Assembly: GCF_001194135.2 (NCBI RefSeq)
Contig: NC_068995.1
Span: 13,514,112 to 13,560,750 of the forward strand
Source of the DNA: Octopus bimaculoides
Lineage: Eukaryota
Direction of reading: 5' to 3'
Length of the DNA: 46,639 nucleotides
The position numbers and the translations under genes are program-made. Each line of letters opens with the position of its first letter. Within the stretch, counting starts at the first letter, position 1. Below the pieces are notes generated by a model that worked only from the letters and a program-made list of their open reading frames with translations, had not been told where the DNA came from and did no database searches. Below, piece after piece: positions 239 to 37,408 of this stretch.

Positions 239-239
239 T

Positions 240-455
240 GTGTCTGTCTGTATATCCCCCCTCACCATCTCTTTACAACTGATGCTGGTGTGTTTATGTC
301 CCCATAACTTAACAGTTTGGCAAAAGAGACCAGTAGAATAAGTACCAGGCTTACAAAGAATAAGTCTTAGGGTCCACTTCTTCAATTAAAACCCTTAAGG
401 CAGTGCTCCAGCATCGCTGCACTCAAATGACTGGAACAAGTAAAACAATAAAAGA
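240..455 (+). mobile_element. SINE family A, 3' half
   Basis: Matches the 3' half of the 28653-29028 copy (gcaaaagagacc..agaataagtac.aggcttacaaagaataagtc...gtgctccagcat...aaatgactg). Confidence 0.8.
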
Positions 456-3217: not shown

Positions 3218-6200
3218 GTTTTCCTTATTTTTTAAACATGTTTTTTACATATCTTATATATTTATAGTCATTAATCAATGAAATGTATTTCAAATGTTAT
3301 TTATTAAATTATTTCTGTTTCTTTTTAATTTTTAGACTCCTGAACTGTTACATTTTGCTAAACAGTATGATGAGCAGGTAATAACTGCATATTCTATCTC
3401 TTCCTTATTTTGTACCTGTTATTTGATAAAGTTAAAAAAAAACCATCTTGCTTATTGTAAAAACTTGTTAGACATCTAGCATTGGTGTGTGTGTGTGTAT
3501 GTGTGTATATATATATATGTATGTATAAGGAAAATGAGACAAGGTAGAAAATGCTAAAATAACTTTATCATGAAAAACATTTTAGTACCAGTTTCATTCT
3601 TTGTGACTTTTTCAGCTTAGAGTAAAGCATGAAAAACAATTAAATTGTGGAAAAATTAAATGAAATGTTTTTTTTAAAATATTTTTTACATAAAAGTAAA
3701 AAAGAAAGAGAGACAGACAGAAAAAAGGAAAATGTTCCTTGCGTTTGAAAACTATGGAAATATTTTAAAAGACATTTCATTTAATTTTTCCACAATTTAA
3801 TTGTTTTCATGCTTTACTCTAAGTTGAAAAAGTCGCAAAGACTGAAACCGGTTCTAAAATGTTCTTCATGATAAAATTATTTTAGCATTTTCTACCTTGT
3901 CTCATTTTCCTTTTACATATCAACTCGTGTGTTCCTTTTCAACCTTCTACATATATATGTGTGTGTGTGTGTATGTGTGAAGGTGTGTGGCTTAATGGTT
4001 AGGCTGTTGCACTCACAATCTCTAGATTTTTGGGTTCGATTCCCCAATTGGTTGGCATATTGTGTTTTTGAGCAAAGCACTTCATTCCACATTGCTCCAG
4101 TCCCCCTTAGATTGGGGGAGATTGTTGGCCTGCTGACCTAGCCAGTAGGGTGGCATCATTTGAAGGCTAAAACAGTACAAAAGCTCATTGTGGCTAGTGA
4201 TGTGTAACAACAGCTGATAACCTGGTTGATCATGTGAGCTATATATATATATTTAAATAGATGTTTTAATTTGGATATGTATATATGTATACATATATTA
4301 TTTTTAATGTGGAACTCGATGTAGATGATACTATAAAAAATAGCATATAAATATTGGTTTAAAGAATGAGTTCCTCCATTAAAAACAACTTATTTCACAT
4401 TTCTTGAAGTTTTTAAATTCTTATATCATAAATAATTTTTGCTGTTAAGAATAAAACCTCTAAAATAGATGAACAAATTTGAAGGATTTCTTTGGTCATG
4501 TGGTAAAACATCTGTCATGTCTGCCAATGATATGAATTCATATATTCATGTCCCATTGACAGCTTTCAACTTTTTTTTTTTCCATTGGAAGAGCTTTTTA
4601 ACTCAATATTTAAAAATTGCTGTTTATAGCTTTATCTACTTTGAGTTTCACCATTGAAAACAATTTATTTCATGCTGCTTGAAGTTTCTAAATTCTTATG
4701 TTGTAAATAACAAATATATTTTATCAACTGCACATTTTCGATGTATGTGTTTTGTTTGTTTGCCAGTGCAATAAGGGAGTCATTCTTTGGGGTTTTTTTT
4801 TATCATAGTGAACCAGGAAACAAACAAAACATATACACTGAATATGTGTGGTTAATAATCTTTTGCAACATGAGTGCTGCTTTTAATTCAATTTGCTATT
4901 GAAATATATACACATATATTTATTATTATTATTATAGAAGAGAGTAAAAAGAAAGAAAATAGAAAGCCTCTCACAATGCAGAAAGTTTTATAAAACCTTT
5001 ATACTTCAAGCGCAAGGCTCATCTTCAAAAGAAAATTGGTCTGGGAAATATCTAGTTATGCAGGTTCCGTTAACTGGAAATTTCTCAGACTGTTTTTCTT
5101 CTGAAGATGGGCTTTTACGCTTGAAATTAAAAAGGGTTTTATGAAACTTAAAACTCTCCGCGTTGTTAGAAACCTTCTAATCTCTCTCTTTTTACCCTCT
5201 TTGATATTACAATATTTCAAGCAAAATACAATGCCCATATTATTATTATAATTTTTTTATATCAGCATGGGTTAGACTATTGAAGCAGCAATGTACCTCA
5301 GAATGGTACCATATATATATATATATATGTATATAAGGATATAATTGTAAGCAAGCAGAAGAAAAGGAAGTTCTCAATACTGAGAGTAGAGTGGTATAAT
5401 TGATTGGAAGCCTGAAACTTCACATATGGTTACCATAGCTTTCTTGTTGCTGATCTAAAGATGATTATGCAAAAAAATAGAGCATGAAATTTGGTATACA
5501 GTGTGCATACAGTAAAAAGGTTTGAACACTGATTGGTGGATATCGAATGAGAAAGTGATGTTATTGGTTAATAATGTAACCATTGTTTCAAAAACACAGA
5601 AGGGAATCTAATACTTAATGAGATAAAAATAAGAATAAACTGTACAATCAATATTGCAAGCATAAGACTATATATGTGTGTGTGTGTATATCTGTATGTT
5701 AGTTGAAAAATATATGTATGTTGTCAACTGTATGTGTTAATAAGAAAAGAGTAGTAGTATAACAGAAGAAACTCAAATCAAGTGCCCTTAAAAGTGGAAA
5801 TTTTTTAAAAAATGATATTCCAATTTCTGTAAATTAACTGATTTAATCAACTATTTAGAAGTACATTACTGCTTCAATCAGCCATTTGGCTGTCCATAAT
5901 TATAAAGAACTTCAAAGAATGCCTGCAGTAATCTAACATTTCTGAACATTCGTTTAATATGTTGTCATCTTTAAATGGTATCACTAATTTTTGTGCTTAA
6001 ACAAAGCTTGCAACAGAAAATATATATGTGTACGTATGGAATGGCATGACTAAGCATCAACCATTAAACTTGAAAGAAAAATTAGATAAATGAGAGGAGA
6101 AAAGAAGGAAGAAAGCAGAATAGCATTGCTCGTTTATTTGTTCATCTGTGTCTAAGAAGACTTATTCTAGTTGAGAAGTGTTTGTCACAGATTGTACACT

Positions 6201-9200
6201 GATGTTTGCTTATACCAGGATTGTTATGGTGTAGATTGTGAGCTTCTCTTTTGGTCTCCACTATAGACATTTGTAAAGATTCAAAAGCCATTGTCCATAT
6301 GTATAAATATATATACGTGAATGTGTATGTGTGTATAAATTTAAAGATACAGACATGGGAAATATGTGTGTGTGTTTGTATGTATGTATTATGCGTTTTG
6401 CTCCATTTATTATTATTCTTCATATATATATATATATATATGTATACATATANNNNNNNNNNNNNNNNNNNNNNNNNNNNNNNNNNNNNNNNNNNNNNNN
6501 NNNNNNNNNNNNNNNNNNNNNNNNNNNNNNNNNNNNNNNNNNNNNATATATATATATATACTCAATACATTAGAACACTATAGACTCTGATAGATAGTTA
6601 TTCATGTGAAAGTGAAACAGGAATATTACTGTTTCATTCATTTGATGAGAAATAATGATGAGTAATGAAATGAAGTGCATTTTCAAGTGACCATGTGATC
6701 ATTCATTGAAATTTCGGAGAAAGAATTTGGGTATTTGTCAGCAAGTGAAAATTAGTTGGCTTCTTTTGTTTAAGATTGCAGGTGGCTAATGTTATCAAAT
6801 TGCAGATAAGGTACATTTGTACCTTAACTAATATTGTTCATGTCATATTGGTGATCTCTGTTTCATTATTTCCAAATATATGTTGAAAGTAGTATGGCTT
6901 TGATGACAAAATGAGCTATTTTACTGAAGCAGCTGAATTTTGAAGGAGTGGTTTGTGAGTCCTTTACAGCTTGTTTATGCATTACAGTACCTTTTTACTA
7001 TGCATTTGTTCTTTAGGTTGTAAAGGTCTATATTACAGTAATTAAATGTCTGATCCTTTTGCTCTTTGTAATATTTTGGCATTGTTGCTCTACTTATCAC
7101 TTGACATGTATCATGGAGCTCATTGTTATGTTCTTGTTCAACAACTAAGGAAATTTGTGGTTGCTCATGATGTATCTTCTGATTTGGGAGAGTAAACAAC
7201 ACTGGCTCCTAACATTGATGTTATATGGTGGGTTATACCATAAAATATTTCTCTTCATATTTTTAGGGTAGTTAGTAGTAATTGTTGGTAACTTCTTCGT
7301 TCCTTTTATTTTTTGAAGAAATACATGTTAGTGCCTCGTTGTAGCACACAGTGGCCTTGTGGGGGCTTCATTGGGGAAGCAGTACATTCATCCTCTTGTT
7401 AATGCTTATATAAGTACATGCTTTAGTGGATGGTTAGATTGTGTTTGGATATACAATGGGAGACTATGACATTTTGTAAATACATAATCATCTTCAGGTC
7501 ACTTTGTGTAATATTTGTGTATGTTCTGGTGAATTGGACAGATTTTAGAAGAGCTTAGTTTATGGAACAAAAACACTCAGTGACAGCATATTGGATAAAT
7601 CTGCATTTCCTTTTCTTTTTGACATCATAGAACATGAAATAACTGATGCAGTGTTGTTCCACAGATTAAAATTTGTAGGCTGTTTATGTCAGCATTTACC
7701 CTAATATCTCATTAACTATACCAAAATCACTTTTGGAAGGATTAATGAGTCTACTTTTAGGTGAGTTTTTGAAATTGTTTTAGTGGCTTTTCAGTTGGCT
7801 TAAGTTTCTTTTCTTTTTTCTTTATTTTCTTGGTGTGTCATTTAAGTTTGTCATGAATTTTATGCTTTGTGGTTATCTAGCTATTTGTGGTTTCTGCATT
7901 GGTTTCACTGTAAATGTCACCCTTGTATTATTTTTCATAGAAATTTGATATACCATTGTGTACAAGGTTCTTGATGGTACCAGTGCTTATCTTGTGTAAC
8001 TTATTTGTTTTGTCTGCAAATATGAACAGATGTTTAGAAAATATGATCGTGTTTAAATCTTGGTTTAGTTTGTTCATTAAAAAAAAAATTCTATTTCCTT
8101 ATTTGGTCTAGTGGTTAAGATGTTGAGCTCATAATGATTAGATCATTGGTTTGATTCTCAGGCTTGGCAGTGCATTGTATCATTAAGCAAGGTACTTCAT
8201 ATCACATTGCTCCAGTACACTTTGTTGAAAATGATTACCAATGGCTCTTAACACTGCTATGGACTGGCAACCTATTCAGTGGAGAGTCCTGAGCTTATAT
8301 GCTTTGAAAATCTGGAAATAAGCTTCAGCCTCACCAGTCTATGGGTTTGAGGCATGAAGAAATGTTCTTTTATTAAACTTATGGAGTTATTTTGAAATTT
8401 ATCTGAAATAATATATAGATTTAACATCTTCATAGTTTTAATCTAGAACCATTTTTTTTCTTTTATTATTTGTTTTGTTATTTTTGTTCAAATAGAAATA
8501 GATCATCTATTGCACATGTTTTATCATGCATCCTTGTACCCTCAATGAGTATTTTAAGTAGACATTCCCTGAAAGGAATTAAAATGTGTTTCATTGAGTA
8601 ATTTCCTTGACTTAAGCCCTTCACCTGCTATGGAGTGTAGGCCATTGACAACTTTTCTTCACTGTTCTTAACTTTGGGGCATCAAATGTGAATGTCCTCT
8701 CCCAGGTCTTGTTGGTTTTGAATTATCATCGATGGTTCTTTAACTTTGCCCTCTTTTAGGTAAGGGTGTTGGCCCTATGCAAACCCATTTTCACCTTTAC
8801 CATACTAGTCTGGCCCCTATCCTTCAGCAATGGAGGCCCTACCAAGAGCTTGCTATCACTAGCATATCTCTTAGTGTCATTTAGGTATACAAGCCACTAC
8901 ACCACAAGAGGTGGGCCTCATTAAGTAGTCTGTCTATTCTTTTCATTGTTTGCATTCCATATTCATGTAATGTCTGTGTATATTCACAACTTCTGGTCAT
9001 TATGGTATATATTGTTTGTTTATTTGTTATGTGAAGGCACATGGCTCACTGATTATAGCATCGGGCTCACAATCATGTGGTAGTGAGTTTGATTCCTGGA
9101 CCGGGCTATGTGTTGTGTTCTTGAGCAAGACACTTGTGATCATGAGTGCAACACCCTAACGACTAGGTCATGCATCCTCACTGAACAACCACACAGAGAA

Positions 9201-12200
9201 TCTTTTATTCACTTGATGCAATATATAGTCAGTGATGGTGTGAGGGTAGTTGCTATGGCATTGAGGTAGATCTGGCCACCCCCGTTAACGGGGACAAAAC
9301 CTGGATTTAAAACACTGGATGATGATGATGATGATGCCTCTTAATAGATACATTGTGTTGTCAGTGAACATGTCACAAACTGTGATGTATAAAGTTTAAT
9401 AACATTTATCTTTTGCTTGTTTCAGTCATTAGATAGTGGCCATGCTGGAGCACTAGTCTGAATGGTTTTAGTTGAACAAATCAACACTTGTACTTATGCT
9501 TTTTTTTTTTTGTTTCTTTGTCAGTCTGATAGTTACTCCATTGGTCTCTCTTGCTGAAGGTAGGAGAGTCATCCAGTCATAGAACACTGCCTCAGAAAAT
9601 CCAGCCAATGCTTACCAGCATGGGAAAAACGATGGTGGTGGTGGTTGTATTGATGATGATGGGTGAGGTGATAGTGGTGGTGAGGATTACGATGACAGGT
9701 GGAGGTGATGGTGATGATGGTTGCACTGGTGGTGCCACTACTACTGCAGCTGCTACCACCATCAATTGTTCATCATCATCATCTCTGCTCTATTTAAAAA
9801 TACATCACTGCAGGAGGAAAATGATACCAAAGTCCAATCTTTTACACTTATCAGTACTATAGATATTTAGAGTGATACCATGATGCCATATATGGTCAGG
9901 AATATATATAACAACTTTTTTGTGCTATAAGTTCTAAACACCTCCTCCCCACCAATATTCTTCCTCCAGTCCTATGTAAATTGCCATATCATGTTATAGA
10001 TAATGCATCTGATATCTTTATATATTTATGGTTGGCAGATGATTGAATTCAGTCTTTCTATTTATCGTATTTATGTGTTGTATGTGTATGTGCATGTGTG
10101 CTTTTAAATTAATTTCTTTTTTATTTTAATTTTTCACATGTTTTTCTTTGTCTCTGTTATTTTTTAAAAATTCTCAATGAATCTTTCAAAAGACTTCTAT
10201 ATTGCAATTCTTTTGCTACTCTTCTCTATAGTTTGTTGATTGCCCCCTGTATAGATCTTTCATTGATTTTTATCACTTTGTTGTCTAGAAATCTATAATT
10301 CTCACCATTTCTTTTATATCATTATTCATTAAATAACCTCTGCAGTATGGGTAACCGAGTCAATTGGGTATTGAGTGACCAACTGGGAGATTGATGGTTC
10401 CCTTCCTATCATTGGCACTGTATTGTGCCAAAGCCAAGAAACTGAAATTACATGAGGCAACTCCTTATAGCTCAAATTAAGTATTACTACATAGTGATGA
10501 GGGTGGTGATGGTGATGGGTGTTGGTGTTTAGCCCAGGTCAGTTATGACTGAGCCGACCTATGGTTAAAGACATTCTGGTCATGACCCTCCCATTTTATT
10601 TTAAGACTAGGATGTGATTTGAAGGAAATTTTGCTGATATTTCTACCACATAGAGACTCTTCTCAACGAATGCCTTGCAGGATGGTTATTGGCAATTAAC
10701 CTCAAATCAGCCTTGATCAAGCAGACATATGATCAGGGCTATCCCAGCCTTGACCATTCAGATTTTTTAAGAGTGACTAAAACTTTAATAAGTAAGCACT
10801 CTAGTTTTATGTCAAGCTCAGACTGACGTTGAGCTTGTGACATCTGGACTATTTATTATCAGGCACCCAGATCGGTAAAGCACTCAGTGGAATGTCCATA
10901 TCAATAGCGTCTGAAGTTGAGGTTGGTGGAGTGTGTAAGCACCAACAGCCAATGAACAAGCCTAGGCATCAATGAGGGCAGTCTGAATAAACTCTTCTAA
11001 TACACTTTCAGATTGGGTGGTGGCGGTGGCTGTTGGAGGTGGTCGTGGTGGTGTGGCACAGAACAATCCAAAATAAACTTTATAGACATGGCAGTGCACT
11101 CATTATGGCCTGTTTGAGACGCATGTAGAGCAGTGGTTCTCATCCAAGGTCTATATAGCCCTTGGGAGTCCGCATAAGATTTTGTTAGAATTTATGTGCA
11201 ATAAAATTGATTATGCTTCTACATAACACAAAATATTACGAAATTTTTTTAATACAATTCCTGATATTCAATTATAAAAATGCAATAGGATTTTATTTCA
11301 ATACCAAATGGCTATGGGGTTCCAGTAAAGTGAAATAGGAATCAAAGGGGTCCATAGATAAAAAAAAATAATATTTGAGAACCACTGATGTAGAGCAATA
11401 AAATTCTCTGTGTCCACTTGTTCAGTATCCAGACTTTACCAAGTTGTAGGGTTATGCCATACACCTGTTATTATGAATAGTACAAATCTAGCTGTCTGCT
11501 GAGTTTTAGACTTTTTGCAGTCTGGTAGCTAGAACAAAAGGGATTAGTGTAGTTGGTGGACAAGATTGTGTGGGACTAAGGACAAACATTTTCCTATCTG
11601 ACCAAACATGTTACCAACTTTTTCCAATGTCCTATTGAAAAGATGAGTGAGAGCAGAGAGTGAAGTGCTACCCTCCTGTAAAATTGCTGAAAAGTGGTTG
11701 AAAGTGGCAAGCATAGTATGCCTGGCTGATTTCTATCTCAAATTTCATATGTAATTTCCTAACAAGGAGAAGGCTTTAGTGCTGATGAACATCTGAATAT
11801 TCATGGGGTGCCATGCTTTGTTCTAAGTGTGTGCTCCACTTTTGAGATATATACATCGTCCAACCCATGCTAGCATGGAAAGCGGACGTTAAACGATGAT
11901 GATGATGATGATGATGATACACATTATATATTTTATATTTTTTTCCTTTTGATGCATGTGTTTATTCGTTTTTTTATTTGTTTCACTCTACATAAAACTC
12001 CCACTGTTTTTGCAACCTGTCTTTGTAATGTCTCCCATTCATCATCTTTGTGGCAAATAAAGAACCAGTAATTATTGGCAGGATTCTTAGAGCATCAGAC
12101 AAAAATGCTTTGTGAGATTTCTTCCAACTCATTATGTTCTAACTTCAAATTCTGCCAGGGATAACTGTCCATTTCATCCCTCCAGGGTCAGTAATATAAA

Positions 12201-15200
12201 ATACCAGTCAAATACTGGACTTGATGTAACTGACTTGCCCCTTCCTCTCAAATTATCAACTTTATGCCTGAATTAGTAAAAATTCTTGTTGTTATCATTT
12301 AGGTGTCAGGCTGGTAGAATTGTTAGTATACTGGACAGAATACTTAGCAACATTTTGTCCAGCTTTATGTTTAGAATTCGAATTCTGCTGAGATCAACTT
12401 TGCCTGTCATCCCTTTAGGGTTGATAAAATAAGTACCACTTGAGAGCACTGATGTCAGTATAATCAACAAGCTCCTTTCCTTAAAATTTCAGGCTTTGCA
12501 CCTACAGTAGAAAGGATTATTATTATTATTAATATAAAGTCAGTGAGCTAACAGAATAATTAGCATATTGGGTAAAATGCTTAGTGCCATTTCCTCCAAC
12601 GCTTTACGTTCTGAGTTCAAATTCCGCTGAGGTTGACTTTGCCTTTCATCCTCTCAGGATCATTAAAATAAGTATTGGGGTTGATGTAATCAACTTACCA
12701 CCTCCTTTGAAATTACTGGCCTTGTTCCCAAATTTGAAACTATTATTATTATTATTATAAATAATGAACCGAAATTATTTATGTTATTATTCATTTACCT
12801 GAGCTTGTGGTGGCAAGTTCACAGAATCATTAGCATGTCAGGCAAAATGCTTAGTGGCATTTTGTCTCTCTTTATGTTCTGAGTTCAAGTTCTGCTGAGG
12901 CCAACTTTATCTTTCATCCCATTAGGGGTTAATAAAATAAGTAGCAGTTGAGTGCTGGGGTTGATGTAATCAACTTACCCCTTCCCCCAAAATTTCTGGC
13001 TTTGTACCAAAATTTGAAATCCTTACATTTCTCTGGGTTGGTGGATTGACAGAATTGTTAAGAGGTTGGACAAAATGCTTTGTGGTATTTGTTCTGGTTC
13101 TTTACATTCTTAGTTCAAACTCCATCAAAGTCAACTTTGGCTTTCATCCCTCCAGGGTGGATAAAACAAAGTACTAGTGAAGTACTGGGTTTGATGTAAT
13201 CAACTGTTCTCCCACACATAGTTTGTAGCCTTGTATTTATGTAAGAAATTAATTATCATCATTATTATAGGCAGTGAGCTGGCAGAACTATTATTGTGCT
13301 GGGCAAAATGCTTAGCTGCATTTCATCCATCTTCACGTCCTGAGTTCAAATTCTGCCAAGGTCAACTTTGCCTTTTATCCTTTCAGGGTCGATAAGAGTG
13401 ACCCTGTTGAGCAGTGGGATCAATGAAATCGACTTACCCACTTCCCTGAAATTATTGGCCTTGCATCAAAATTTGAAACCATTATTTTTATTATAGGCAA
13501 TGAAGACTGAGTTGGCAGGATCATTAGCATGCTAGACAAAATGCTTTGCAGCATTTCGTCCATTTTTACATTCTGAGTTCAAATTCTGCTGAGGTCAACT
13601 TTGCCTTATATTCTTTCAGAGTTGGTAAAATAAGCACCAGTTAAACACTGGGGTTGATGTCATCAACTAACCCCATCCCCCCAAAATTTCAGGCCTTGTG
13701 CCTATAGTAGAAAAGATTATTATGGGCATCGGATCAGCAGAATTGGTAGAGCATAAGACAAAATACCTTTGGTATTAAGTTACACTATTTTACATCTTAA
13801 ATTTCAAATCACTCTAAGATCAACTTTGCCTTCCATCCTTTTTGGATTGATAAAATAAAGTACCAGTCAGATGCTAGGGTTGATTTAACCCTTCAGCATT
13901 CAGATTACTCTGTCAAAGGTAATACTCATTCACATCATTTAAAATTAATCTTGCATTATCTCATTGCTTTGAGATTTCAATGATGTGATTGCTTATTTTC
14001 AGAATAACATTATAGGGTAAATGTTTGAGATTGGATCTAGGTGATCTGAACATAATATAGTTAGAACATTTGAGCTGGATATGGGCAGTTTAATGTTAAA
14101 GAGTTAATAATTCAATCCCTTTCTTCAAATTTCTGACATGTACCTATCTAAAAATTCAGTTATGTTGTTTTTCCCATCATTCCTCTTTGTTCAGACATTT
14201 CATCCAAATGTTTATATTCAGTTCAATAACAAAAGGTTGCTTTTATGTAGGTGTTTTATCTGGATACAGATGGAACAGAGCAAGTGGTATGCAAATTATT
14301 TCATGAAAGTTTTGATTTTTTGCTTTTTTGTTGTCTTAGAAGATACAACTGGAGTGTTTTTTTTTTTTTAAATATTTTGTGTCTTTTTATCTTTTTATTT
14401 TGCATGTAGGCTGAGGTGAGTGTGTTCCGAATGACATTAATAAATACATTTAAATAAAAAAAATATTAACTACTAACCACTATTACTTATTATTGTAATT
14501 ATTATTGTCAGAAATCATCATCATCATCTTTATCATCATCATTGGCAGAATCATTAGCCCATTGGACAAAATGTTTAGCAGAACTTCTTCCGGCTATTTA
14601 CATTCTGAGCTCAAATCCTGCTGAAATCAACTTTGCCCTTCATCCTTTCAGGATCAATAAAATAAGATACTAGGGCTGATGTGATCAACTTGCCCCCCCC
14701 CCTCCTCCTCCTCCTCCCAAGCTGGCAGAATTATTAGTACGCTGGATAAAATGCTTACAGACATTTCTTCTAGCTTTATGTTCTGAGTTCAGAAACTGCC
14801 GCAGTAAATTTTGCCTTTCATCTTTTCATAGTCAGTTAACCTTTAGCATGCTTAGGCACGTCATGTCACCATACGAGTTTTCTCCCCTGTAACTGCAGGT
14901 GCACTGTATCACGTTGAGAAGGGAGAAAACTCATACAGCAACGTGATGTGCCTACAACATGCTAAGGGTTAAAAGAAGTACCAGCTGAGCACTGGGGTTG
15001 ATGTAATTGACTTTACCCTTCCTTTTAGTTTGCTGGCCTTGTGCCAGAATTTGAAATTATTATTATTATTATTATTGGCAAAATCCTTACAGCATCATAA
15101 AAAAATGTATTTGTTATAGCTCATTGCATTTTGAGTTCAAAATCTCACCAAGGTCAGCTTCACCTTTCATCCATGCATGGTTGATAGAAATAAAGTTCTT

Positions 15201-18200
15201 CTTTTCTTCCTTCTTCTCGAGTAGAAATGGTGAAGTAGCAGATTATTTTATACAGCATTTATCTTTGTCCCTCTTAGATCCTGACTAGAAGTCTTACCAA
15301 GGTTGACTTAGCTTTTTCATCATCCCCAGGGTTGATACACTAAGCACCTGTCAAAGAATGGTGTGGAATGGAGTAGATGATGATAGAAGGGTCAGATTAA
15401 TCAACTCTAATTTCATGTTCTGATTACATATGTGGCTATGAGACATTTTGTCACCGCCATCTTGGTGCCACTTATTTTGTGTTGCTAATTTGATGCTGAC
15501 TTACTTGACATCAGACATTTTGATGTTTCTATCATGCTTTTCCTACTCTCTCACTCTCTCTCTCTCTCTCTTTATTTGTATGAGCATCTATTTATGCTTG
15601 TATGTATGTATAATGTTTCTCTCTCTCTTTCTTTCTCTCTATTTGTATGTCTATATTTCTGCACACACATGCATGTGTATGTGTGTTTGCCTCTAGCACC
15701 AAAATATACTGTTGTCAAAATAGGTTGAGTGCCCAGTCAGCTGTGCCAAACCCTCAGCATCGAAACAGCTGTACCCAGTCATATCATTCAATTGGCGTTA
15801 GGAACAGCACCCAGCTGTAGAAACCTTGCCAAATCAGATTGGAGACTAGTACAACATCCCGGCTTATCAGTTTTCAGTCAAACCGTCCATCCCATGCCAG
15901 CGAGGAAAGCAGATATTAAATGACGATGACAATGATGATGATGATGATGATTACCATTAATAATGAGTTTATAACATGCATCTTTATTTAGCAGAGTAGT
16001 AAATGGAAATTCACTATGGGGCGAGTAATCTTCGGAAGAAGAATTCCTGTCAAGCAGGTGATTCAGCCCATTAATACCCAACACTCTAAGAGAGCCAGGC
16101 CCACTTAGGTCATGACTCCTAGGTGTCCTCCTGCTGTTTTTTGAAAAGACACTTTATCAAATGCCTCACTCATGACCCATCTTTGTTCCTGAATACAACA
16201 ATGCTGCTATGTATGCATTTTATTCCATTCTCTAAAATACTTGTGATCTCATAACTTCAATCAATTTAAGGGATTTATTTATTTTTTCTTTCATTAGTAA
16301 ACTCCTGCTTTTTCTGCCTCTGCTACAACAGCCTGTACTCCTTGCAAGTATCTTGTTGCATATCACCTTCACCAAACTCTACCCAAGTGGTACATTCTTC
16401 TCTTCTGTTCTTCTCCCCTGTTTTTTACTATGTCACATCTCCCCTGTTTTTTACTATGTCACATCTTCCCTGTCCTAAGTACTGTAGTAACCATAATGTC
16501 CATCCCTTTCACACCAGAACATCAGTTATTTGGAGTTCCCCCACTGTGTATGTTCTTCCTGTAGATGTCAACTTATTACTGTTCAAACTGAGCAGAGATT
16601 GGTTGAAATCAACATTAATATTAACCAATATTTTAGGGCCTGTAAGGCAGCAAACTGACAAAACTGTTAGCATGCTAGGCAAAATGCTTAACAGCATTTC
16701 ATCTGTCTTTACATTCTGAGTTCAGATTCTGTCAAGGTCGACTACACTTTTCGTCCTTTCAGGGTCAATAAAGTAAGTACCAGTTGAATTGCTGGTCTTG
16801 TGCTAAAATTTGAAATCAATATCTGAGGACCTGTGAATGTCATAAACACAGCCCCTTTCTCCTGAGTAATCCACCAAACCCTTCCTCCCCCAAAAAACAT
16901 ATTTTATCAAATAGATACAACACTTCTTTCTGTTATTATACCATTCATGTTACAATATCATTATCTGTACATGTTACTAATGAGGGAGATATTACACAGT
17001 TAGTTGCTGAACCTTCTTGAAATACAATCAGGTTTACTTCAAATCACACCCCTATCAAAAGATCACAGGGAACTATGTAGTCATTGATATATATAAAAAG
17101 ACATGAAGGCATAAATGTAACATATTTGATCAGAGGTACAAGGTGATATTAAAAAGTTCCTGGATTGGTTTTGTAGCACACCAACAGATGGCAGCACATG
17201 GTTGCGTGTGCAGTGACATCACTGTATTTACTTTGCAAGTTGTGAAATTTGTGTTTTTGTGATTGTGTGTGTGCTGTAGTCTGTGATTTTGTCATGGCCA
17301 GGAACAAAGAGCCAATGTGAAAGTTTGCATTGAACTCGGGAAGTCTGCTACAGAGACATTGAGCATGTTTTGGCAAGCTAACAGTGACAAGGCAATGGGT
17401 CGTACACCATATTTCAAGTGGCACGGATGCTTCAAAAGCAGAAGAATATCTCTGGAAGACCTGAGCATCATTGCCATGAGCATCATCGCCAGAAATGTAT
17501 AGTGCATCGAGAATTCATCCCTCAGGGCCAGACCATAAATTGAGAGCTCTAACTGAGCTGACATGTATTTCATCCATAACCACCATGTCTTTTTAGAGGT
17601 AACTAACCCTGGATGGTGCCATCATTGACATACAAAAAAAAAAAAAAAAAAAAAAAAAATGAAAATCATAGCTGTAACATCTTTGGTCATAGTTGTTGTT
17701 AAACCCCAGGGCAACCTTGTCTGAGCTTGGATTTGATCAAATGTATTCCTTCTTTGACCATCATGTCTTTTAGATGTAACTAACACTACATTATCCAACA
17801 TGTCTTTTTTTTCTTCTTTGTTTGAAATGGTGTTATTTGATTTGAACAAGATTTTACTGCTATTTCTAGCTAGGCATGTGACTACATTAAAAGCTCCTTC
17901 ATTGGCTCAATAAACATGTGGTTCATTTTATGGGACAAAAATTAGAACAGTGTTTCAAAATAACAGTTGTGACTCTGAAATTTATGACAAGTTGAAGTCA
18001 TTTGGTTGATGCTACATTATGCATGCTTGTTTTGAAACTGGGAAAAAAGAAAAATTAAGATCAAATGACCAGGTTTTAAGAAATTGGTGGAAATTCAATC
18101 AACTTGAATGATATGGTTTTTTATTTTAGTTCATTACTAAAACTTATTTTAGTTTATTTAGTTCATTACTAATTTCTTCCATTGCAGTCTTAATTAATTC

Positions 18201-21200
18201 AAGCAGATTGACTTTGTTATAAAATAATTAAATATTATAGTCACTAAAATATACTGATTTTCTTATAAATATCTTTATTAAATGAATGAAAAGAAATTAA
18301 ATTATTTATAAGTGAACTTAATTAAAAATATTAATTATTAATAGTTAACTTTTCATTTATATCAGTTTTTGATAAAAGTATTAACTTTTTATTTGGAATT
18401 AACTTGATTTTATGATTTTATTTTATTATTTTTTATTATTTTATTATTTTTTTTTTAGGTTTCAGAATAAATTGTGTCTATAAATAACATGTTTATAAAA
18501 AGTATAGAGATTTAATTTTATTTTCTTCTGCTTGTCCTGAATTTATTGTAATTTTCATGATTGGATTGTGTGTGTGTGTACATGTACACATTTGGCTTTG
18601 CTTGACACTTGTAATGTCTCTTTGTCCTTGTAATCTAGTTCGTTGCAGAAAATAATATTTCAGCTGAACTTAGTCCAGTATTCAGTGATAGGGTTGTTCT
18701 TCTATATGTTTAATCAATGGATGTTAGTATTTGCTTGTAACCTCTTTAGACCATAGGACACAATATCAGACTTGTAGTGTGCATCAAAAGCATAGTAGTG
18801 AATATTAATCGAGTGTGCGACATAGATGAGAAAGCATATAATAATAATAATAATAATAACAATAACAACAACAACAACACTAATCATTGAGTTAAAAGAA
18901 TGCTTGAGTTGGAGAAATGCAAGAATTTTGGAGATTTTCATAATCAAACAGATAAAAAGCTAGAATATAATAAACCAAACATAGCAATATTAGACAAAGA
19001 ATAGTGAAGTTGATTACTAATTGATCCATCATATCAGTCTGATTCCAGGATTGTAAAGAAAGGAGATGAAAAATTAAAAAAATACAATTCCTTAAAATTT
19101 GAAATTGCAAGATTTTGGAATATGAAAACTGTAAAGGTTGTACCTGTGTTACTTGGTGTATTAGGATCTGTGAGTAAAGATATAGACAAATGGTTGAAGG
19201 AGATTGGAATGGAATGTCCTCCAGAGCTTCTACTGAAAGTTTGCCTCGTAGGGACAGGAAAGATTATCAGGAGAGTTTTAAGCACTATCTAAGGTTTCCG
19301 GTAGTAACCCACATAAATTCTACCGGGAATAAGAACAAACCTGAATCAAATCACAAATAATAATTATAATACCTAATGAAAACACAAATAATGTACACAA
19401 AACAAGCCTCGAGAATAACGGCATTGTAAACATAAATTGTGAGGAGAGACCTAGCATGTGTGAAATAAAGTGTATAACAAGCCCCAGCCATGTACCTCTG
19501 AAGAACTCAATGGTAAAATAGCAACAAGAATAAAAAAGAAATTGCAAGCCTGGCTATCATGGACATAATGAAAACAGATAGAAACATCATTATCACTTAG
19601 TTAATTAATTATTATGTATGTATATGCTGCAGACACTGTAGCTATTAGAGGGAAATGGTTATAACCTCTGATCCACTCATATAGGACTATGAAAACAAAA
19701 CCCAAACAAATACTATGGAAAACAAATATACAGCAAAAGATAGAAAATTCAGAAAAAAGATCTCTCAGTTTTTAATGAAATAAGAGCACAAGTTTAAAAA
19801 GAAGACAACTACAAAAGACAACATTATCTGTGAAGTACAGAACTCAGAGCTGAAACCAAAGAATTCTTGATTGCAGCATAAGGTCAAAACCTTAAACCTT
19901 TTCACTGGAAACCACCAAAAGCATGTAATGAAACAGGATACATTGTTATGGCAGAATATGTGGCCTAGTCTTTATTGCAGTGTGGTGGCAACCTATGCAT
20001 CATATGCATGGTGAACATTATTATTACAATAATGTTCACTATGCTTATGATGATTTATTGGTTGGCAGATAAACAAAAGTCATCAACTCTTGTTCAATTC
20101 ATTAGGCAGGGTCAGCTTTACTTGAGGTGACACAACAATGTCGAAACAACACGAGTTCTAAAGTCCCCATACACTAATGAATCAAGTGTATTATAAACCT
20201 GCATTCATCTGAAAGGACAAGTTGTTCTCAATGAAATACAAGTGATTAGCATATTCATGTTTGAATTTGCTGCAATGTATTAAGAATGAATACGTATTCT
20301 TTTCTACTCTAGGCACAAGGCCTGAAATTTTTGGGGAGGGGGTCAGTCAATTAGATCAACCCCAGTATGCAACTAGTACTTAATTTCTCTACCCCGACAG
20401 GATGAAAGGCAAAGTCGGCCTCAGCGGAATTTGAACTCAGAACATACAGAGAGATGAAATACTTATTTCTTTATTGCCTACAAGGGGCTAAACATAGAGG
20501 GGACAAACAAGGACAGACAAAGGGATTAAGTCGTAACTGGTACTTAATTTATCGACCCTGAAAGGATGAAATGTAAAGTCGACCTCGGCGGAATTTGAAC
20601 TCAGAACGTAACGGCAGATGAAATACCGCCAAGCATTTCGCCCGGTGTGCTAACATTTCTGCCAGCTCCCTGCCTTAAGAATGAACATGTGTGTCATTGT
20701 TTTGATTCTCACTGTTCTGATTCTTATTGTGTGTGTGTGTGTGTGTTATATAATGTTATAGTATGTTACATAATATAGGTCAGGTACTCTGTCAGTTATG
20801 ACAAATGTTACAGTTGATTTGATCAACCTAATATCCTGTTCATGAAATTAATGTGCAGGTGGCAGAGCACTCCACAGACACACATACCCTAGTCCTCGGG
20901 GAGATTCAATATGACACAATTTAACAAGGCTGGCCCATTGAACTACAGGTGCAACTCATTTTTGCCAGCTGAGTGGGCTGGAGCAGTGCGAAATAAAATA
21001 TCTTGATGAAGGACAGAATGTGCCCCAGGAATCTAATTCATGACCTTAGAATCGTGAGCTAAATACAATAACTACAAAGCCACATACCTTCACATATATT
21101 ACATTATAAATGATAACAATCCTTTCTTCTATAGGCACAAGGCCTGGAATTTTGGTGGGGAGGGAGCTTGTCAACTATTGGGTTGGTGTATAAGTATTGC

Positions 21201-21702
21201 GGCTTTTTTTCAACAAATTTTATTCAACAAAAACAATAACATGTAACAAAAACATCTTTAAATGATTATTCCGGGGCATATTCACCATCTACTTCAATTA
21301 CTGCTTCCCATTTGCTTGGCAGATGGTCAAACCGTCATTTAAAGATGTTTTTGTTAAATATTGTTATTGTTTTTGTTGAATAAAATTTGTTGAAAAAAGC
21401 CGCAATAATTATGCACCAACCCAATACATTGACCCCAGTGCTCGACTGGTACTTATTTCATTAACCCTGAAAGGATGAAAGGCAAAGTCAGCCCCAGCAG
21501 AATTTGAATTCTTTTACTCTTTTACTTGTTTCAGTCATTTGACTGCGGCCATGCTGGAGCACCGCCTTTAGTCGAGCAAATTGACCCCAGGACTTATTCT
21601 TTGTAAGCCTAGTACTTATTCTATCGGTCTCTTTTGCCGAACCGCTAAGTTACGGGGACGTAAACACATCAGCATCAGTTGTCAAGCGATGTTGGGGCAC
21701 AA

Positions 21703-21751
<49 letters not shown>

Positions 21752-22123
21752 CGACAGGCTTCTTTCAGTTTCTGTCTACCAAATCCACTCACAAGGCTTT
21801 GGTCGGCCCGAGGCTATAGTAGAAGACACTTGCCCGAACATAAAGTTGGATGAAATGCTGCTAAGCATTTTGCCTGATATGTTAACAATTCTGCCAGCTC
21901 ACTGCCTTAATAATAATATAATGATAATATCAATACAGATTCTGCAAAAAAAATATTGAAGGAAACAACTACAAACCAATGATTTGCTTGTATTATTAGT
22001 GTGAGAAGGGCTCGTGTGTGCATCTTAGGCAGAAAAAATACAAAATATTCTTATTTAAAAGTAGTTTCATCAGTCTTCCTGATGATATTTACATTTTTCA
22101 TTATATCAGTGAAAGAAATGCAT

Positions 22124-22218
<95 letters not shown>

Positions 22219-25200
22219 TTTTCACAGAATTTATGTTAACCAAACTCCACTCACAAGGCATGGATAAACCTGAGGCTATCATAGGAAACCATTTGTCAAA
22301 GGTGCTATACAGTGAGATTGAACCTAGAACGATAGATTTGCAAGGCAAGCTTCTTAACCACAGAGACATGCCTACAACCAATACGTCCTTTTGCTGCAGA
22401 CTCACCAGAGACTAGTCTCAGGCCTATGATACAAACTTCCAGTTTTAAACTGATGTGAATTATAACATTCCATTACAATTTCATGTTAAGTGTTATGGGA
22501 GAATCCTGTACACCCCCACCTGACTGAAAGTGGACTAATGGATTTCAATAAATAAAGAACTGTGTGAACTGTCACGGGCAGTGGACAGTGTTGGTCGACC
22601 ATATTGATTATTGTTTTACAACCAGCATGTACATACACATCATAGCAGTAAGTAAAGTCTCTACCTGGTGACCAGAGGGGGAGGCTGTTTCTCAACCAAT
22701 ACATCGCTCTGGGTATCACTGGATGATGAACTTTGGTGATGATGTTATTCCACACTTTCCCATCTATGGTGCTGGTCTTGGCATGCTCAAAGTCAAGACA
22801 CTATGACCTCAGGTCTTCCTCAATTTATTTCACTCATGTCTTCTTTGGTGTGCTGCACTGGATTCTTTGGTGTGGTAGTCTTCTGGTGCTCGTCCTGCTG
22901 ATGTCAAATCACTGTAGCCTGCACTGCCGAACTTGATCTTCAACGGTCGACTGCTGCTACTGGCCTTGTTCTCGGATGTTGTTGTTTGAGATTCAGTCAC
23001 GTAGAGAGACTCCAAGGATCTGACAAAAGACACCACCTTTGGAACACCTCAAACTTGTTCAGGTCTTGTTTGAGGATGGTCCAGGTATCAGCACTGTGGA
23101 GGAGGACAGGCAAAACCAGCATGCAGAAAAGACGGCTCTTGATCTTTAGGGAGATGTTGGGCTTTTTCCAGACACAACATCACATTAATTTATGTTCCAA
23201 ACATCAACTTAATAATGAACGAACTTATTTTACTGAACTCTTCCTTATTTAGAAACTTTAACTGAATCAAAGACTGTATATTTCAACAGAAATAATTTGA
23301 TAACAAAAAGGATTAATGGTTTTTTGCCAAATATTTTTTTTTTGTGGTTATTTCAATTTGTCTTTTTCTTTCTTTTTTTTCTTTGGCAGGTTGTAAAAGG
23401 TGAAGGTCCTATAAAGAAGTTGCATAAATTACGGCGACAAGTGTCCAAGAAATTGAAATCTCCATTTTATTACGACAAAGAGGTGTTTAAACCAACACCT
23501 AAACAGTACAAATGTCCGTTCTCACGGGATAAAGATTATTTGTAAGTATTCAGGGCTTATATAAGACTAGCAGAGATACCCGGCATTGCCCGTGTTACAT
23601 GTAATTGAAGAATGAGACTTTTCTGTTATATTTTGTTTAAGGAACTGGAATACCTATGATTTGAATTTCATCAAAATTGCACATGAGGGTTCTTTCCCTC
23701 TTTACACACCCTAAAAAAATTCTAATCATGACACATGTATGTATCCCATACTATTGATCTTTATGCGCATATTCCAAAATTCCAGTCTACTGGAACCTAA
23801 AAAAAGGATTTTGCTCCTGAAGAATGGAGCTCTAAAATGTGGGAATGAAGGCCTCTATTGGGGGTGGGGGTGTTAATGTCAACCAGAGAAGAATGTTTTT
23901 AACTTGGGTCTTATAATATGCCTGTATATATGTGAGAGTATAGTTTCACTTGAAATTGAAAGTATTTAAGTGAAAGTATCTGACATTACAGTAGTGACAT
24001 GTTATTGTTTCACTTTTGACACGTAATAGTGAAATAGTGGAGGAGATATGATATTGCTGTGGGCTTGAACTATGCAAGAAGTTAAAAATTTTTTGGGCCT
24101 AAGACACTTTATGGACCCTAAGTAAGGGCATGTGTANNNNNNNNNNNNNNNNNNNNNNNNNNNNNNNNNNNNNNNNNNNNNNNNNNNNNNNNNNNNNNNN
24201 NNNNNNNNNNNNNNNNNNNNNNNNNNNNNNNNNNNNNNNNNNNNNNNNNNNNNNNNNNNNNNNNNNNNNNNNNNNNNNNNNNNNNNNNNNNNNNNNNNNN
24301 NNNNNNNNNNNNNNNNNNNNNNNNNNNNNNNNNNNNNNNNNNNNNNNNNNNNNNNNNNNNNNNNNNNNNNNNNNNNNNNNNNNNNNNNNNNNNNNNNNNN
24401 NNNNNNNNNNNNNNNNNNNNNNNNNNNNNNNNNNNNNNNNNNNNNNNNNNNNNNNNNNNNNNNNNNNNNNNNNNNNNNNNNNNNNNNNNNNNNNNNNNNN
24501 NNNNNNNNNNNNNNNNNNNNNNNNNNNNNNNNNNNNNNNNNNNNNNNNNNNNNNNNNNNNNNNNNNNNNNNNNNNNNNNNNNNNNNNNNNNNNNNNNNNN
24601 NNNNNNNNNNNNNNNNNNNNNNNNNNNNNNNNNNNNNNNNNNNNNNNNNNNNNNNNNNNNNNNNNNNNNNNNNNNNNNNNNNNNNNNNNNNNNNNNNNNN
24701 NNNNNNNNNNNNNNNNNNNNNNNNNNNNNNNNNNNNNNNNNNNNNNNNNNNNNNNNNNNNNNNNNNNNNNNNNNNNNNNNNNNNNNNNNNNNNNNNNNNN
24801 NNNNNNNNNNNNNNNNNNNNNNNNNNNNNNNNNNNNNNNNNNNNNNNNNNNNNNNNNNNNNNNNNNNNNNNNNNNNNNNNNNNNNNNNNNNNNNNNNNNN
24901 NNNNNNNNNNNNNNNNNNNNNNNNNNNNNNNNNNNNNNNNNNNNNNNNNNNNNNNNNNNNNNNNNNNNNNNNNNNNNNNNNNNNNNNNNNNNNNNNNNNN
25001 NNNNCACACACATATACAAACATGCACACACACACACACACATATACCAACATGCACACACACACACACACATGCAAACATGCACACACACTCATGTGCA
25101 AACAAGGGAAAATATGAACACATGCACACACACACACACACTCTCAGACATATGGATTCACTCATACATGCATGCATGTATGCATTCACATGCACACACA

Positions 25201-26917
25201 CACACTCTCATATGCTTACATACTCTCTCACACACACACACCAGGGCTGTGGAGTCAAGACAAAAAACTTCGACTCCTCTACTGTTGGCACCTCTGACTC
25301 TGACTCCTCTTTATGTAATTAAGTGATTGTGGTCTACATATCTAATAAAGTATATGTATACGCTTGTACTTTGAGCAGGCCTATATGTTGTAACTGGTTT
25401 ACATTAAAGAATAAAGACATTGTGAGTCAGAGTCGGTATAATTTTACCAACTCTGACTCCAGCTACCCCTTAATTGTTTCTGACTCTGACTCCAACTCCA
25501 CAGCCCTGACACACATCTGCACTCACTCACATGTGCATACACTCATACATGCATGTACTGAAAAGATGCTTGATATATACAAAATGCTTCTCTTCAGTTT
25601 CCATCTTCCAATTTTAGTCAACCCATGGCTATAAAAGAGAACTCTTACCAACAACATCCATACAACAGGAGTGAACCTCTAACCACATGGTTCCAAGGTG
25701 AACTTAACCATACCTATGCCTATTATCGTTAGCATACTGGACAAAATTCTTAGCAGTGTTCCTTTTGGCTTTACATTCTGAGTTCAAATTCCACCAAGAT
25801 CAACTCTGAGACATGTTACATTTGTTGGAAGCAGGTGAAGCTTGGCAACAGTAATAGCATCCAGCCATAGAAATTCTGCCTCAACAAATCTCATCTAATT
25901 CATACATACATCTCATCCATGCATAGATGTTAAGTTCAGGATGATGTGTTCCACCAGTAATTTTCTTTTTATGGCTATATCAGAGGTGAAAAGACAATAG
26001 TTATAGACTTTTTACAGAGTCTCTGTTTAAAGATGCACATGATACATTATCTTTTCTATTTTTATATTGTTTCACTCATTGAGTGCAGTTCATGAAAGGT
26101 TTATTCAAACAGATCAACTCCAGTACTTAAAGGCTGTCTTAATCTCCAACTTTACTTGGAGGTTGTTTTAGAACACAGAATATTACTTTATTTACAAGGG
26201 CGGCAAACTGGCAGAAATGTTAGCGCATCAGGTAAAATGCTTAGTGGTATTTCGTCTGTCTTTATGTTCTGAGATCAAATTCCACTGAGGCCGACTTTGC
26301 CTTTCATTCTTTCGGGGGTTGATAAATTAAGTACCAGTTGCATACTGGGGTCGATTTAATCAACNNNNNNNNNNTTAATCAACTGACCCCCTCCCCCAAA
26401 ATTTTAGGTCTTGTGCTTAGAGTAGAAAAGAATATTTTTAAGGTAGTGAGCTGGCAGAATCATTAGCATGCCGGGCGAAATGCTTAGCAGTATTTCATCT
26501 GTCTTTACATTCTGAGTTCAAATTCCGCCAAGGTCAACTTTGCCTTTCACCCTTTCAGGGTCAATAAATTAAGTACCAGTTGCGTACTGAGGTCACACCA
26601 ATCGGGTGACCCCCTCCCCCAAAATTTCGGGCCTTGTACCTAGAATAGAAAAAAATATTACTTTATTTACTCTGAGAGGACCTCGCATATAGACTCAAGA
26701 AAATAATGCAGTATTCCGTGTTCTAACACAACCCCCACATTAAGTTGGAGATCAAGATTGCCTTTTGGCCTTAATACTGCTTCTGTAGCTATTAATTATT
26801 TTTTAATAACCCTAGTGTTTATTTTTTAAGTCTGGCACTCATTCTTTTGGTACCTTTTGCCAAATAGTTAGGCTACAGAGATGTAAACAAATTGATACTA
26901 GCTGCCAAGCAATGGGG

Positions 26918-37364: not shown

Positions 37365-37408
<44 letters not shown>

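What the first reader, a model, noticed from the sequence alone, without database searches (positions are those of the whole stretch)
14410..14415. 6-nt microexon candidate (Ala-Glu) with a neural-microexon-type TGC upstream, in the middle of a 20-kb intron
Seen: U-rich tract, then TGCatgtAG, GCTGAG and a perfect GTGAGT donor. Phase 0-0 matches the flanking exons, and it sits in a ~430-bp repeat-free island (14108-14540) inside a dense SINE array. Known: bilaterian neural microexons regulated by the SRRM3/4 eMIC domain have a UGC between the pyrimidine tract and the AG; vertebrate ANO1 gating is tuned by a 12-nt microexon (EAVK). Inference: a neural-specific 2-aa insertion in the cytosolic N-terminal domain that gene predictors would miss.
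Basis: partly seen in the sequence, partly recalled or inferred. Interest (0 to 1): 0.75.

Follow-up and report, generated by a model that had tools for sequence, protein, structure and literature searches.

The report
Probable chance splice-site look-alike in intron
The six bases flanked by splice-like signals are really there inside a 20-kb intron of an octopus-type anoctamin-1 gene, but such a pattern is expected by chance fairly often and nothing available shows it is ever used as an exon.

Summary
The literal observation is correct. At 14401-14421 the + strand reads TGCATGTAG|GCTGAG|GTGAGT behind a T-rich tract. It lies 55% of the way into the 20,012-nt intron (3378-23389) between a 42-nt exon (3336-3377, ...YDEQ) and the next exon (23390-23541, VVKGEGP...) of an ANO1-like gene. 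Both flanking exon ends are phase 0, so inclusion would add Ala-Glu.

It is the best-scoring 3-27-nt in-frame AG..GT pair on either strand of the window. However, Markov simulations give 0.3-0.6 equally good pairs per 46.6-kb strand, and 0.08-0.17 if a TGC within 20 nt is also required.

The 'repeat-free island' is real (13889-14499) but is only one of 16 unique stretches of at least 150 nt in the intron.

The only transcript I could recover across this junction, a decapod cephalopod RNA-seq contig, joins the two exons directly.

The vertebrate ANO1 EAVK microexon is not homologous; its position is the 38991|40339 junction.

Best reading: a non-functional pseudo-exon (about 0.8). A true 6-nt microexon is about 0.07. 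A recursive splice site (AG|GT at 14414-14417) is about 0.03.

The parts
3336..3377 (+). Upstream 42-nt coding exon ([14 protein letters not shown]), phase 0-0, ends ...GAGCAG|gtaata
   Evidence: Matches ELLKYAEQYDEQ and DLLEYAEQYDEQ in the decapod sequences P0001 and P0002.
3378..23389 (+). 20,012-nt intron that holds the candidate
   Evidence: Gene model. The decapod transcript L001 joins the orthologous exons directly.
13889..14499 (.). 611-nt stretch with no repeat elsewhere in the window (the 'island')
   Evidence: Self-BLAST. No Rfam match.
14355..14407 (+). 53-nt AG-free, T-rich tract (T13 at 14357-14369). The only yUnAy branch candidate at a usable distance has its A at 14389.
14401..14406 (+). 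TGCATG: contains the TGC at -9 and is also a UGCAUG Rbfox-type hexamer
   Evidence: TGCATG occurs 24 times on the + strand of the window.
14408..14409 (+). Acceptor-like AG (TAG|G), PWM 5.6 bits
14410..14415 (+). Candidate 6-nt exon GCTGAG (Ala-Glu). Its last two bases form AG|GT with the donor.
14416..14421 (+). Donor-like GTGAGT (GAG|GTGAGT, PWM 12.5 bits)
23390..23541 (+). Downstream coding exon ([10 protein letters not shown]...RDKDY), starts in phase 0

Best explanation
The site is a non-functional pseudo-exon. A near-consensus U1-type 5' splice-site sequence (GAG|GTGAGT) happens to lie 6 nt downstream of a TAG that follows one of the many T-rich tracts in this AT-rich intron. In normal splicing the whole 20-kb intron is removed in one piece and the two coding exons (...YDEQ | VVKGEGP...) are joined directly. 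The frame compatibility follows automatically, because both flanking exon ends are phase 0 and any stop-free 6-mer would fit. What is shown: the motif, its phase, its chance expectation, and direct exon joining in a related cephalopod. What is inferred: that octopus mRNA never contains the 6 nt.
For: Markov simulations of the window give 0.25-0.59 equally good in-frame AG..GT pairs per 46.6-kb strand. They give 0.08-0.17 for the full reader pattern including TGC. AGGTRAGT occurs 3 times on the + strand and once on the - strand, which is about the i.i.d. expectation.

Extrapolated to a genome of about 2.7 Gb (size from my own knowledge), that means thousands of such decoys. Against that stand a few hundred true eMIC-type exons in a well-studied invertebrate: 170 dependent plus 128 sensitive in Drosophila (PMC8797185).

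The acceptor is weaker than most real acceptors of this gene, with purines at -4, -6 and -8. There is no CTRAY branch site.

The decapod transcript L001 joins the orthologous exons with no insertion, and the spacing from DEQ to the conserved PF is the same in both.

The island is not unusual: there are many other unique stretches in the intron. There is no RNA family hit.
Against: It is the top-scoring microexon-like configuration on either strand of the window. It has several features reported for eMIC-dependent microexons: a very strong 5' splice site, a weak 3' splice site, a UGC close to the 3' splice site, a fairly long AG-exclusion zone, and frame preservation (PMC8797185). Real 6-nt neural microexons exist: TAF1 34' (PMC6948980) and APBB1/2/3 (bioRxiv 10.64898/2026.09.05.749416). 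The insertion point lies in a lineage-variable linker of the N-terminal domain, where 2 extra residues should be tolerated. The one transcript that lacks it comes from a distant cephalopod and an unknown tissue.
Confidence: 0.8

Rival explanations
1. A genuine 6-nt alternative microexon. In cells expressing an SRRM-type eMIC factor, the factor binds the UGC next to the weak 3' splice site, helps U2AF/U2 assemble there, and the strong GTGAGT donor defines the tiny exon. Ala-Glu is then inserted between ...YDEQ and VVKGEGP... in the cytosolic N-terminal (Anoct_dimer) domain.
For: The motif architecture matches: TGC at -9, a 53-nt AG-exclusion zone, a T-rich tract, a 12.5-bit donor, phase 0-0 and no stop codon. 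The features agree with those listed in PMC8797185. There is precedent for 6-nt neural microexons. The insertion site falls in the last turn of predicted helix 85-99, just before a Gly-rich loop, in a region of variable length among homologues.
Against: There is no expression or conservation evidence. The pattern is expected by chance at 0.08-0.17 per window. There is no strong branch site and no UCUC motif. The UGC is embedded in UGCAUG right at the 3' splice site, which would more likely recruit Rbfox as a repressor (general knowledge). The decapod transcript lacks any insertion.
Confidence: 0.07
2. A recursive splice site (ratchet point). The second AG (14414-14415) abuts GTGAGT, so splicing the upstream exon to this AG would regenerate a perfect CAG|GTGAGT donor. 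The 20-kb intron would then be removed in two steps of 11 kb and 9 kb, leaving no trace in the mRNA.
For: A juxtaposed AG|GT with a strong donor and 70% pyrimidines in the 30 nt upstream. The site is near the intron midpoint (55%), as reported for fly recursive sites (PMC6110457).
Against: The base at -3 is G (GAG), the least favoured acceptor. A better TAG lies only 6 nt upstream and would normally be chosen (general knowledge). No usable downstream donor exists for the cryptic RS-exon that recursive splicing requires (PMC8605326): the best candidates score 0.3-0.6 bits at +79 and +91. The intron is only 20 kb, whereas fly recursive sites are typical of introns longer than 40 kb. By chance, the probability that at least one of the three + strand AGGTRAGT sites has at least 70% pyrimidines upstream is about 0.2.
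Confidence: 0.03
3. An occasionally used cryptic site with no coding role. Either the strong donor pairs with a more distant upstream acceptor (for example 14250|14251, giving a 165-nt exon with an in-frame TAG at 14407-14409) to make a rare poison exon. Or it simply binds U1 snRNP and helps suppress the nearby AATAAA signals (14439, 14453) in the long intron.
For: The donor is one of only two on the + strand scoring at least 12.4 bits. The reading frame opening at 14251 runs into the TAG at 14407-14409. AATAAA occurs 23 and 37 nt downstream of the donor.
Against: AATAAA occurs 48 times on the + strand of the window, so the proximity is unremarkable. No transcript evidence exists. None of this is distinguishable from neutral sequence with the data in hand.
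Confidence: 0.05

Closest known systems
TAF1 microexon 34' (6 nt, SRRM4-dependent, mammals)
   Same: Six nucleotides adding two residues in frame, with UGC in the pyrimidine tract upstream of the 3' splice site (PMC6948980).
   Different: TAF1 34' has two UGC motifs at -18 and -29, shown by mutagenesis to be required. Its inclusion is documented and it is conserved. Here there is one TGC at -9 inside a TGCATG, with no expression or conservation data.
Bilaterian-ancestral 6-nt neural microexon of APBB1/2/3
   Same: Same length class. It shows that 6-nt neural exons can exist in protostome lineages; the comparison set included Octopus bimaculoides (bioRxiv 10.64898/2026.09.05.749416).
   Different: That exon is defined by RNA-seq and by exon orthology across phyla. 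The present candidate has neither, and ANO genes are not mentioned in that study's text.
Vertebrate ANO1 segment c (EAVK, 12-nt microexon)
   Same: Same gene family. The window's protein is closest to mouse anoctamin-1 among solved structures, E = 1e-77.
   Different: Segment c follows the ...EEEE motif after the second transmembrane helix (established knowledge). In this gene that position is the junction 38991|40339 (...LHYQEEE|EPPRPEY), about 270 residues downstream of the candidate site. The two are not homologous, and no strong microexon-like pair lies in that 1.35-kb intron.
Drosophila intronic ratchet points (recursive splice sites)
   Same: Juxtaposed AG|GTRAGT behind a pyrimidine tract, near the midpoint of a long intron (PMC6110457, PMC8605326).
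   Different: The -3 base is G, a competing AG lies 6 nt upstream, there is no downstream donor for an RS-exon, and the intron is shorter than typical recursive introns.
Intronic pseudo-exons (decoy splice-site pairs)
   Same: Splice-site-like sequences at chance frequency deep in a long, repeat-rich intron, with no evidence of use.
   Different: None found. This is the class the site fits best.

Membership tests
eMIC/SRRM3-4-dependent neural microexon | Length 3-27 nt, frame-preserving, no stop codon | tested here: met
   The 6 nt GCT GAG lie between phase-0 exon ends. This is trivially satisfied by most 6-mers.
eMIC/SRRM3-4-dependent neural microexon | UGC motif close upstream of the 3' splice site | tested here: met
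   TGC at 14401-14403, position -9. Among all AG dinucleotides in the window, 13% have a TGC within 12 nt upstream and 21% within 20 nt.
eMIC/SRRM3-4-dependent neural microexon | Long AG-exclusion zone, long pyrimidine tract with UCUC, strong branch-point sequence (PMC8797185) | tested here: inconclusive
   The AG-exclusion zone is 53 nt and the tract is T-rich with 77% pyrimidines. There is no UCUC and no CTRAY/CUAAY; only TTTAT sites with the branch A 20 or 12 nt from the AG.
eMIC/SRRM3-4-dependent neural microexon | Inclusion in mRNA, enriched in neural tissue | not testable with these tools
   No octopus transcript data could be reached. The single decapod transcript L001 lacks an insertion.
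eMIC/SRRM3-4-dependent neural microexon | Conservation of the exon and flanking intron in related species | not testable with these tools
   No DNA was returned for the cuttlefish gene because its range exceeds 100 kb. The metagenome scan was empty. No cephalopod genomes are in the collections.
Recursive splice site (ratchet point) | [quoted passage not shown] | tested here: inconclusive
   AG|GTGAGT is present at 14414-14421 with 70% pyrimidines upstream. However, -3 is G and a TAG lies 6 nt upstream.
Recursive splice site (ratchet point) | Cryptic RS-exon closed by a downstream donor (about 50 nt; PMC8605326) | tested here: not met
   The best downstream GT sites score 0.3 bits (+79) and 0.6 bits (+91); the real donors in the gene score 3-6 bits.
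Recursive splice site (ratchet point) | Splicing intermediates (ratchet junction reads, sawtooth pattern, lariats) | not testable with these tools
   No RNA-seq access.
Orthologue of vertebrate ANO1 segment c (EAVK) | Position directly after the EEEE motif of the first intracellular loop | tested here: not met
   The candidate lies in the N-terminal Anoct_dimer domain, between residues 97 and 98 of the window-encoded fragment. The EEE motif ends at residue 365, at 38991.
Anoctamin-1/2-like gene (host gene) | Anoct_dimer plus Anoctamin Pfam domains; closest solved structure is ANO1 | tested here: met
   PF16178 at 2.7e-66 and PF04547 at 1.1e-32. Mouse ANO1 at 1.1e-77, ahead of ANO6 at 9e-66.

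The most novel reading that the evidence does not exclude
A cephalopod-lineage 6-nt neural microexon in an ANO1-like chloride channel. It would insert Ala-Glu at the end of a helix in the cytosolic N-terminal domain and be controlled by UGC/eMIC, possibly antagonised by Rbfox through the overlapping UGCAUG. That would be an independent origin of microexon tuning in the anoctamin family, parallel to the vertebrate EAVK segment.
Probability: 0.07. Interest if true: 0.5.

Novelty: not a real feature. Interest (0 to 1): 0.15.

Why it matters
If real, it would be a gene-predictor-invisible exon and an example of recurrent microexon evolution in an ion-channel family. It would be testable by electrophysiology of the two isoforms. 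As it stands, it mainly illustrates a general point. In long, AT-rich, T-tract-rich cephalopod introns, near-perfect microexon-like motif sets arise by chance about once per 0.3-0.6 Mb of strand with the TGC included. Motif evidence alone therefore cannot nominate microexons. Junction reads or conservation are needed.

Tried and rejected
1. Protein searches with the exon translations, hoping to find octopus transcripts or isoforms with an AE insertion. These returned only one decapod RNA-seq contig and a truncated cuttlefish ANO1 model. Every hit in that collection was shorter than 500 aa, and no octopus sequence appeared. The exhaustive search of cluster representatives gave a 54%-identical 963-aa relative of unknown source (P0121) as its best hit and again no cephalopod full-length protein.

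2. Fetching cuttlefish genomic DNA to test conservation.

3. Exact look-up of an ORF in the island (14138-14371), to find other assemblies of this locus. It is not on record.

4. An exact 24-mer scan of metagenome contigs. No hits.

5. Rfam on the whole window and, more permissively, on the island. Nothing credible. The tRNA scan was empty.

6. Testing whether the island is a repeat or the tail of an antisense retroposon. Only T-run matches were found within the window. This cannot be tested genome-wide here.

7. The supplementary tables of the 2026 preprint on tissue-specific splicing that includes O. bimaculoides. These are not held.

8. Literature searches on cephalopod microexons and cephalopod anoctamin. 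Nothing relevant to this exon.

9. Homology to the vertebrate EAVK segment. Rejected on position.

Full report
What is in the sequence. The + strand at 14340-14425 reads aagatacaactggagtg-T13-aaatattttgtgtctttttatctttttatttTGCATGTAG|GCTGAG|GTGAGTgtgt. There is a T-rich tract, with T13 at 14357-14369 inside a 53-nt AG-free stretch at 14355-14407. TGC is at 14401-14403, the AG at 14408-14409, GCTGAG at 14410-14415 and GTGAGT at 14416-14421.

The host gene. I rebuilt the gene on the + strand from open reading stretches, splice signals and homologues.
- Exons: 1265-1417, 1901-1996, 3336-3377, 23390-23541, 29128-29246, 30468-30523, 34727-34830, 35911-36045, 36991-37148, 38912-38991, 40339-40410, 41745-41822, 43992-44156 and 45305-45453.
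- The first ten exons translate without a stop into 365 residues. These carry the Anoct_dimer (2.7e-66) and Anoctamin (1.1e-32) Pfam domains.
- Among solved structures they match mouse anoctamin-1 best (1.1e-77, against 9e-66 for ANO6).
- The nearest database proteins are a cuttlefish protein named ANO1 and a decapod RNA-seq contig. The window is therefore a cephalopod ANO1-like gene.
- The candidate lies in the 20,012-nt intron 3378-23389, at 55% of its length.
- The upstream exon is only 42 nt ([14 protein letters not shown]) and ends ...GAG CAG|. The downstream exon begins |GTT GTA. Both ends are phase 0, so the 6 nt would add Ala-Glu.

Is it more than chance?
- I scored all AG...GT pairs enclosing 3-27 nt (multiples of three, no in-frame stop) with simple metazoan splice-site weight matrices written from memory, so the scores are approximate.
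- The candidate (acceptor 5.6 bits, donor 12.5 bits) is the best such pair on either strand of the window. It is the only one on the + strand with donor at least 8 and acceptor at least 3 bits.
- That ranking is what one expects of a site hand-picked as the best in the window. The relevant question is how often a window of this size yields one.
- Sequences simulated from the window's own 1st-, 3rd- and 5th-order Markov statistics contain 0.25, 0.34 and 0.59 pairs of equal or better summed score per 46.6-kb strand.
It occurs 0.29-0.58 times per simulated strand, and 0.08-0.17 times when a TGC within 20 nt is added.
- AGGTRAGT itself occurs three times on the + strand and once on the - strand, close to the compositional expectation.
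- The full pattern is therefore a roughly 1-in-6 to 1-in-12 event per window.
- Scaled to a genome of about 2.7 Gb (size from my own knowledge), this implies thousands of look-alikes. A well-studied invertebrate has a few hundred eMIC-regulated exons: 170 dependent and 128 sensitive in Drosophila (PMC8797185).
- That puts the motif-only prior for a true microexon at a few percent. I raise it modestly because the host is an ion-channel gene and the site is the best in its intron.

The 'island'. A self-BLAST of the window shows 13889-14499 has no repeat elsewhere in the window. Multi-copy SINE-like elements flank it at about 12100-13888 and 14500-15200, with 5-16 copies each. It is not distinctive, because the same intron has 15 other unique stretches of at least 150 nt, including 9507-11854 and 16796-20277. 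More sensitive matching finds only T-run hits. Rfam finds nothing.

Comparison with the known microexon code. PMC8797185 lists these features for eMIC-dependent exons: very weak 3' splice sites, long AG-exclusion zones, UGC close to the 3' splice site, long pyrimidine tracts rich in UCUC, and strong branch points. Mammalian targets also have strong 5' splice sites.
- The candidate has the weak acceptor, the strong donor, one UGC at -9 and a 53-nt AG-exclusion zone.
- It lacks UCUC and any CTRAY/CUAAY. The only yUnAy at a workable distance is TTTAT, with its A at 14389.
- The UGC is part of UGCAUG, the Rbfox hexamer, sitting directly on the 3' splice site. From general knowledge, Rbfox bound upstream of an exon usually represses it, which does not fit neural-specific inclusion.
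- TGCATG is common here, with 24 copies per strand, so I attach no weight to its presence as such.

Transcript and homologue evidence.
- The only cephalopod transcript I could obtain is Logan contig L001 (SRR27666078). It is a decapod-type sequence, 70% identical to the window protein after I repaired its frameshifts from the other reading frames.
- It contains the 42-nt exon and reads ...TATGATGAACAG|GTGGTCACT..., with no extra codons. The distance from DEQ to the conserved PF motif is the same as in the window protein.
- This is one assembled isoform from an unknown tissue of a distant relative, so it is weak negative evidence.
- Across phyla this segment is a variable linker. The annelid Owenia and the JGI sequence P0004 lack the 42-nt-exon sequence, and the closest full-length relative in the representative library (P0121, source unknown) carries a much longer insert.
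- An AlphaFold2 model of the N-terminal 285 residues (mean pLDDT 89) places the junction in the last turn of helix 85-99, just before the KGEGP loop and helix 105-119.
- A two-residue insertion there is plausible but not predicted by anything.

A rival worth stating. The last two bases of the hexamer make AG|GTGAGT, the juxtaposed acceptor-donor motif of recursive splice sites. In flies these sites tend to sit near the midpoints of long introns (PMC6110457). Against this:
- the acceptor would be GAG, with a better TAG only 6 nt upstream;
- the intron is 20 kb, whereas fly recursive sites are typical of introns longer than 40 kb;
- the cryptic RS-exon with a downstream donor that recursive splicing requires (PMC8605326) has no candidate donor better than 0.6 bits within 160 nt.

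The ANO1 analogy. Vertebrate segment c (EAVK) follows the EEEE motif after the second transmembrane helix (established knowledge). The alignment to mouse ANO1 ends at that motif, at residue 365 of my model, which is exon end 38991. The next exon (40339-40410) starts EPPRPEY. The candidate is about 270 residues upstream, in a different domain, so the analogy is not homology. No strong microexon-like pair lies in the 38992-40338 intron.

What could not be done. Neither octopus RNA-seq nor any other cephalopod genome is reachable with these tools.
- The cuttlefish gene is too long for its DNA to be returned.
- An ORF from the island is not on record.
- The metagenome scan was empty.
- The supplementary exon tables of the preprint that analysed O. 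bimaculoides tissue-specific splicing are not held.

Verdict. It is within what chance supplies, has no supporting evidence, and has one weak piece of contrary evidence. I rate a non-functional pseudo-exon at about 0.8, a true 6-nt microexon at about 0.07, a cryptic, poison-exon or U1-binding role at about 0.05, and a recursive site at about 0.03.

Noticed in passing
window 3336-3377: A 42-nt phase 0-0 coding exon ([14 protein letters not shown]). It is conserved in the decapod sequences P0001 and P0002 but absent from the annelid, insect and vertebrate ANO1-like proteins aligned, so it looks like a cephalopod-specific small exon. It could itself be a cassette exon.
   Followed up: partly
window 38991|40339 (intron 38992-40338): This junction (...LHYQEEE|[10 protein letters not shown]...) is the position homologous to the vertebrate ANO1 EAVK microexon. 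The donor at 38992 is unusually weak (GTGCCC). No strong microexon-like AG..GT pair was found in the 1.35-kb intron.
   Followed up: partly
window 29246|30468: The junction ...SYSCG|IKKMISDG aligns with the place where rodent ANO1 (P0027) carries the 22-residue segment b insertion. The 1.2-kb intron was not searched for an equivalent alternative exon.
   Followed up: no
The hexamer occurs 24 times on the + strand against about 9 expected from base composition.
   Followed up: partly
window 14414-14421: AG|GTGAGT juxtaposition (the recursive-splice-site motif) at 55% of the 20-kb intron. There is no downstream donor for an RS-exon.
   Followed up: yes
window 37752-37760 and 7759-7767: Two other AG|GTRAGT strings on the + strand: CAG|GTAAGT in the 37149-38911 intron and TAG|GTGAGT in the 20-kb intron. 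Neither has a pyrimidine tract upstream.
   Followed up: partly
window 12100-13888, 14500-15200 and elsewhere (e.g. 26400-26650, 1700-1800): Many diverged copies of a SINE-like element of about 150-200 nt (...GGCAGAATCATTAGC...CATTCTGAGTTCAAATCC...TTTCATCCTTTCAGGGTCGATAAA...). It is often adjacent to tri- or hexanucleotide microsatellites. ARAGORN finds no intact tRNA head.
   Followed up: partly
window 2-385 (- strand) and 19014-19289 (+ strand): Open reading stretches that look like retroelement remnants. The first reads ...FSFAGDIYQQFSGVAMGTRMGPNYANLFVGYVE..., which is reverse-transcriptase-like. The second is ...[31 protein letters not shown]... Pfam gave no significant hit at E <= 0.01.
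   Followed up: partly
window 6453-6545, 24137-25004, 26365-26374, 31303-31522: Runs of N (assembly gaps). All lie in introns of the gene model. The 868-nt gap at 24137-25004 is in the intron after the 23390-23541 exon.
   Followed up: no
L001 (Logan SRR27666078 contig), about 840-960: The decapod ANO1-like transcript contig has frameshifts, so its coding sequence is split over three frames. They may be homopolymer errors; I did not locate the shift points. The called protein P0001 therefore ends in a spurious tail.
   Followed up: partly
protein searches: All 120 hits listed by the word-indexed protein collection were shorter than 500 aa, while the representative library returned full-length anoctamins of about 900-1,200 aa. 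The absence of full-length cephalopod proteins in the former may therefore be a property of the index rather than of biology.
   Followed up: no
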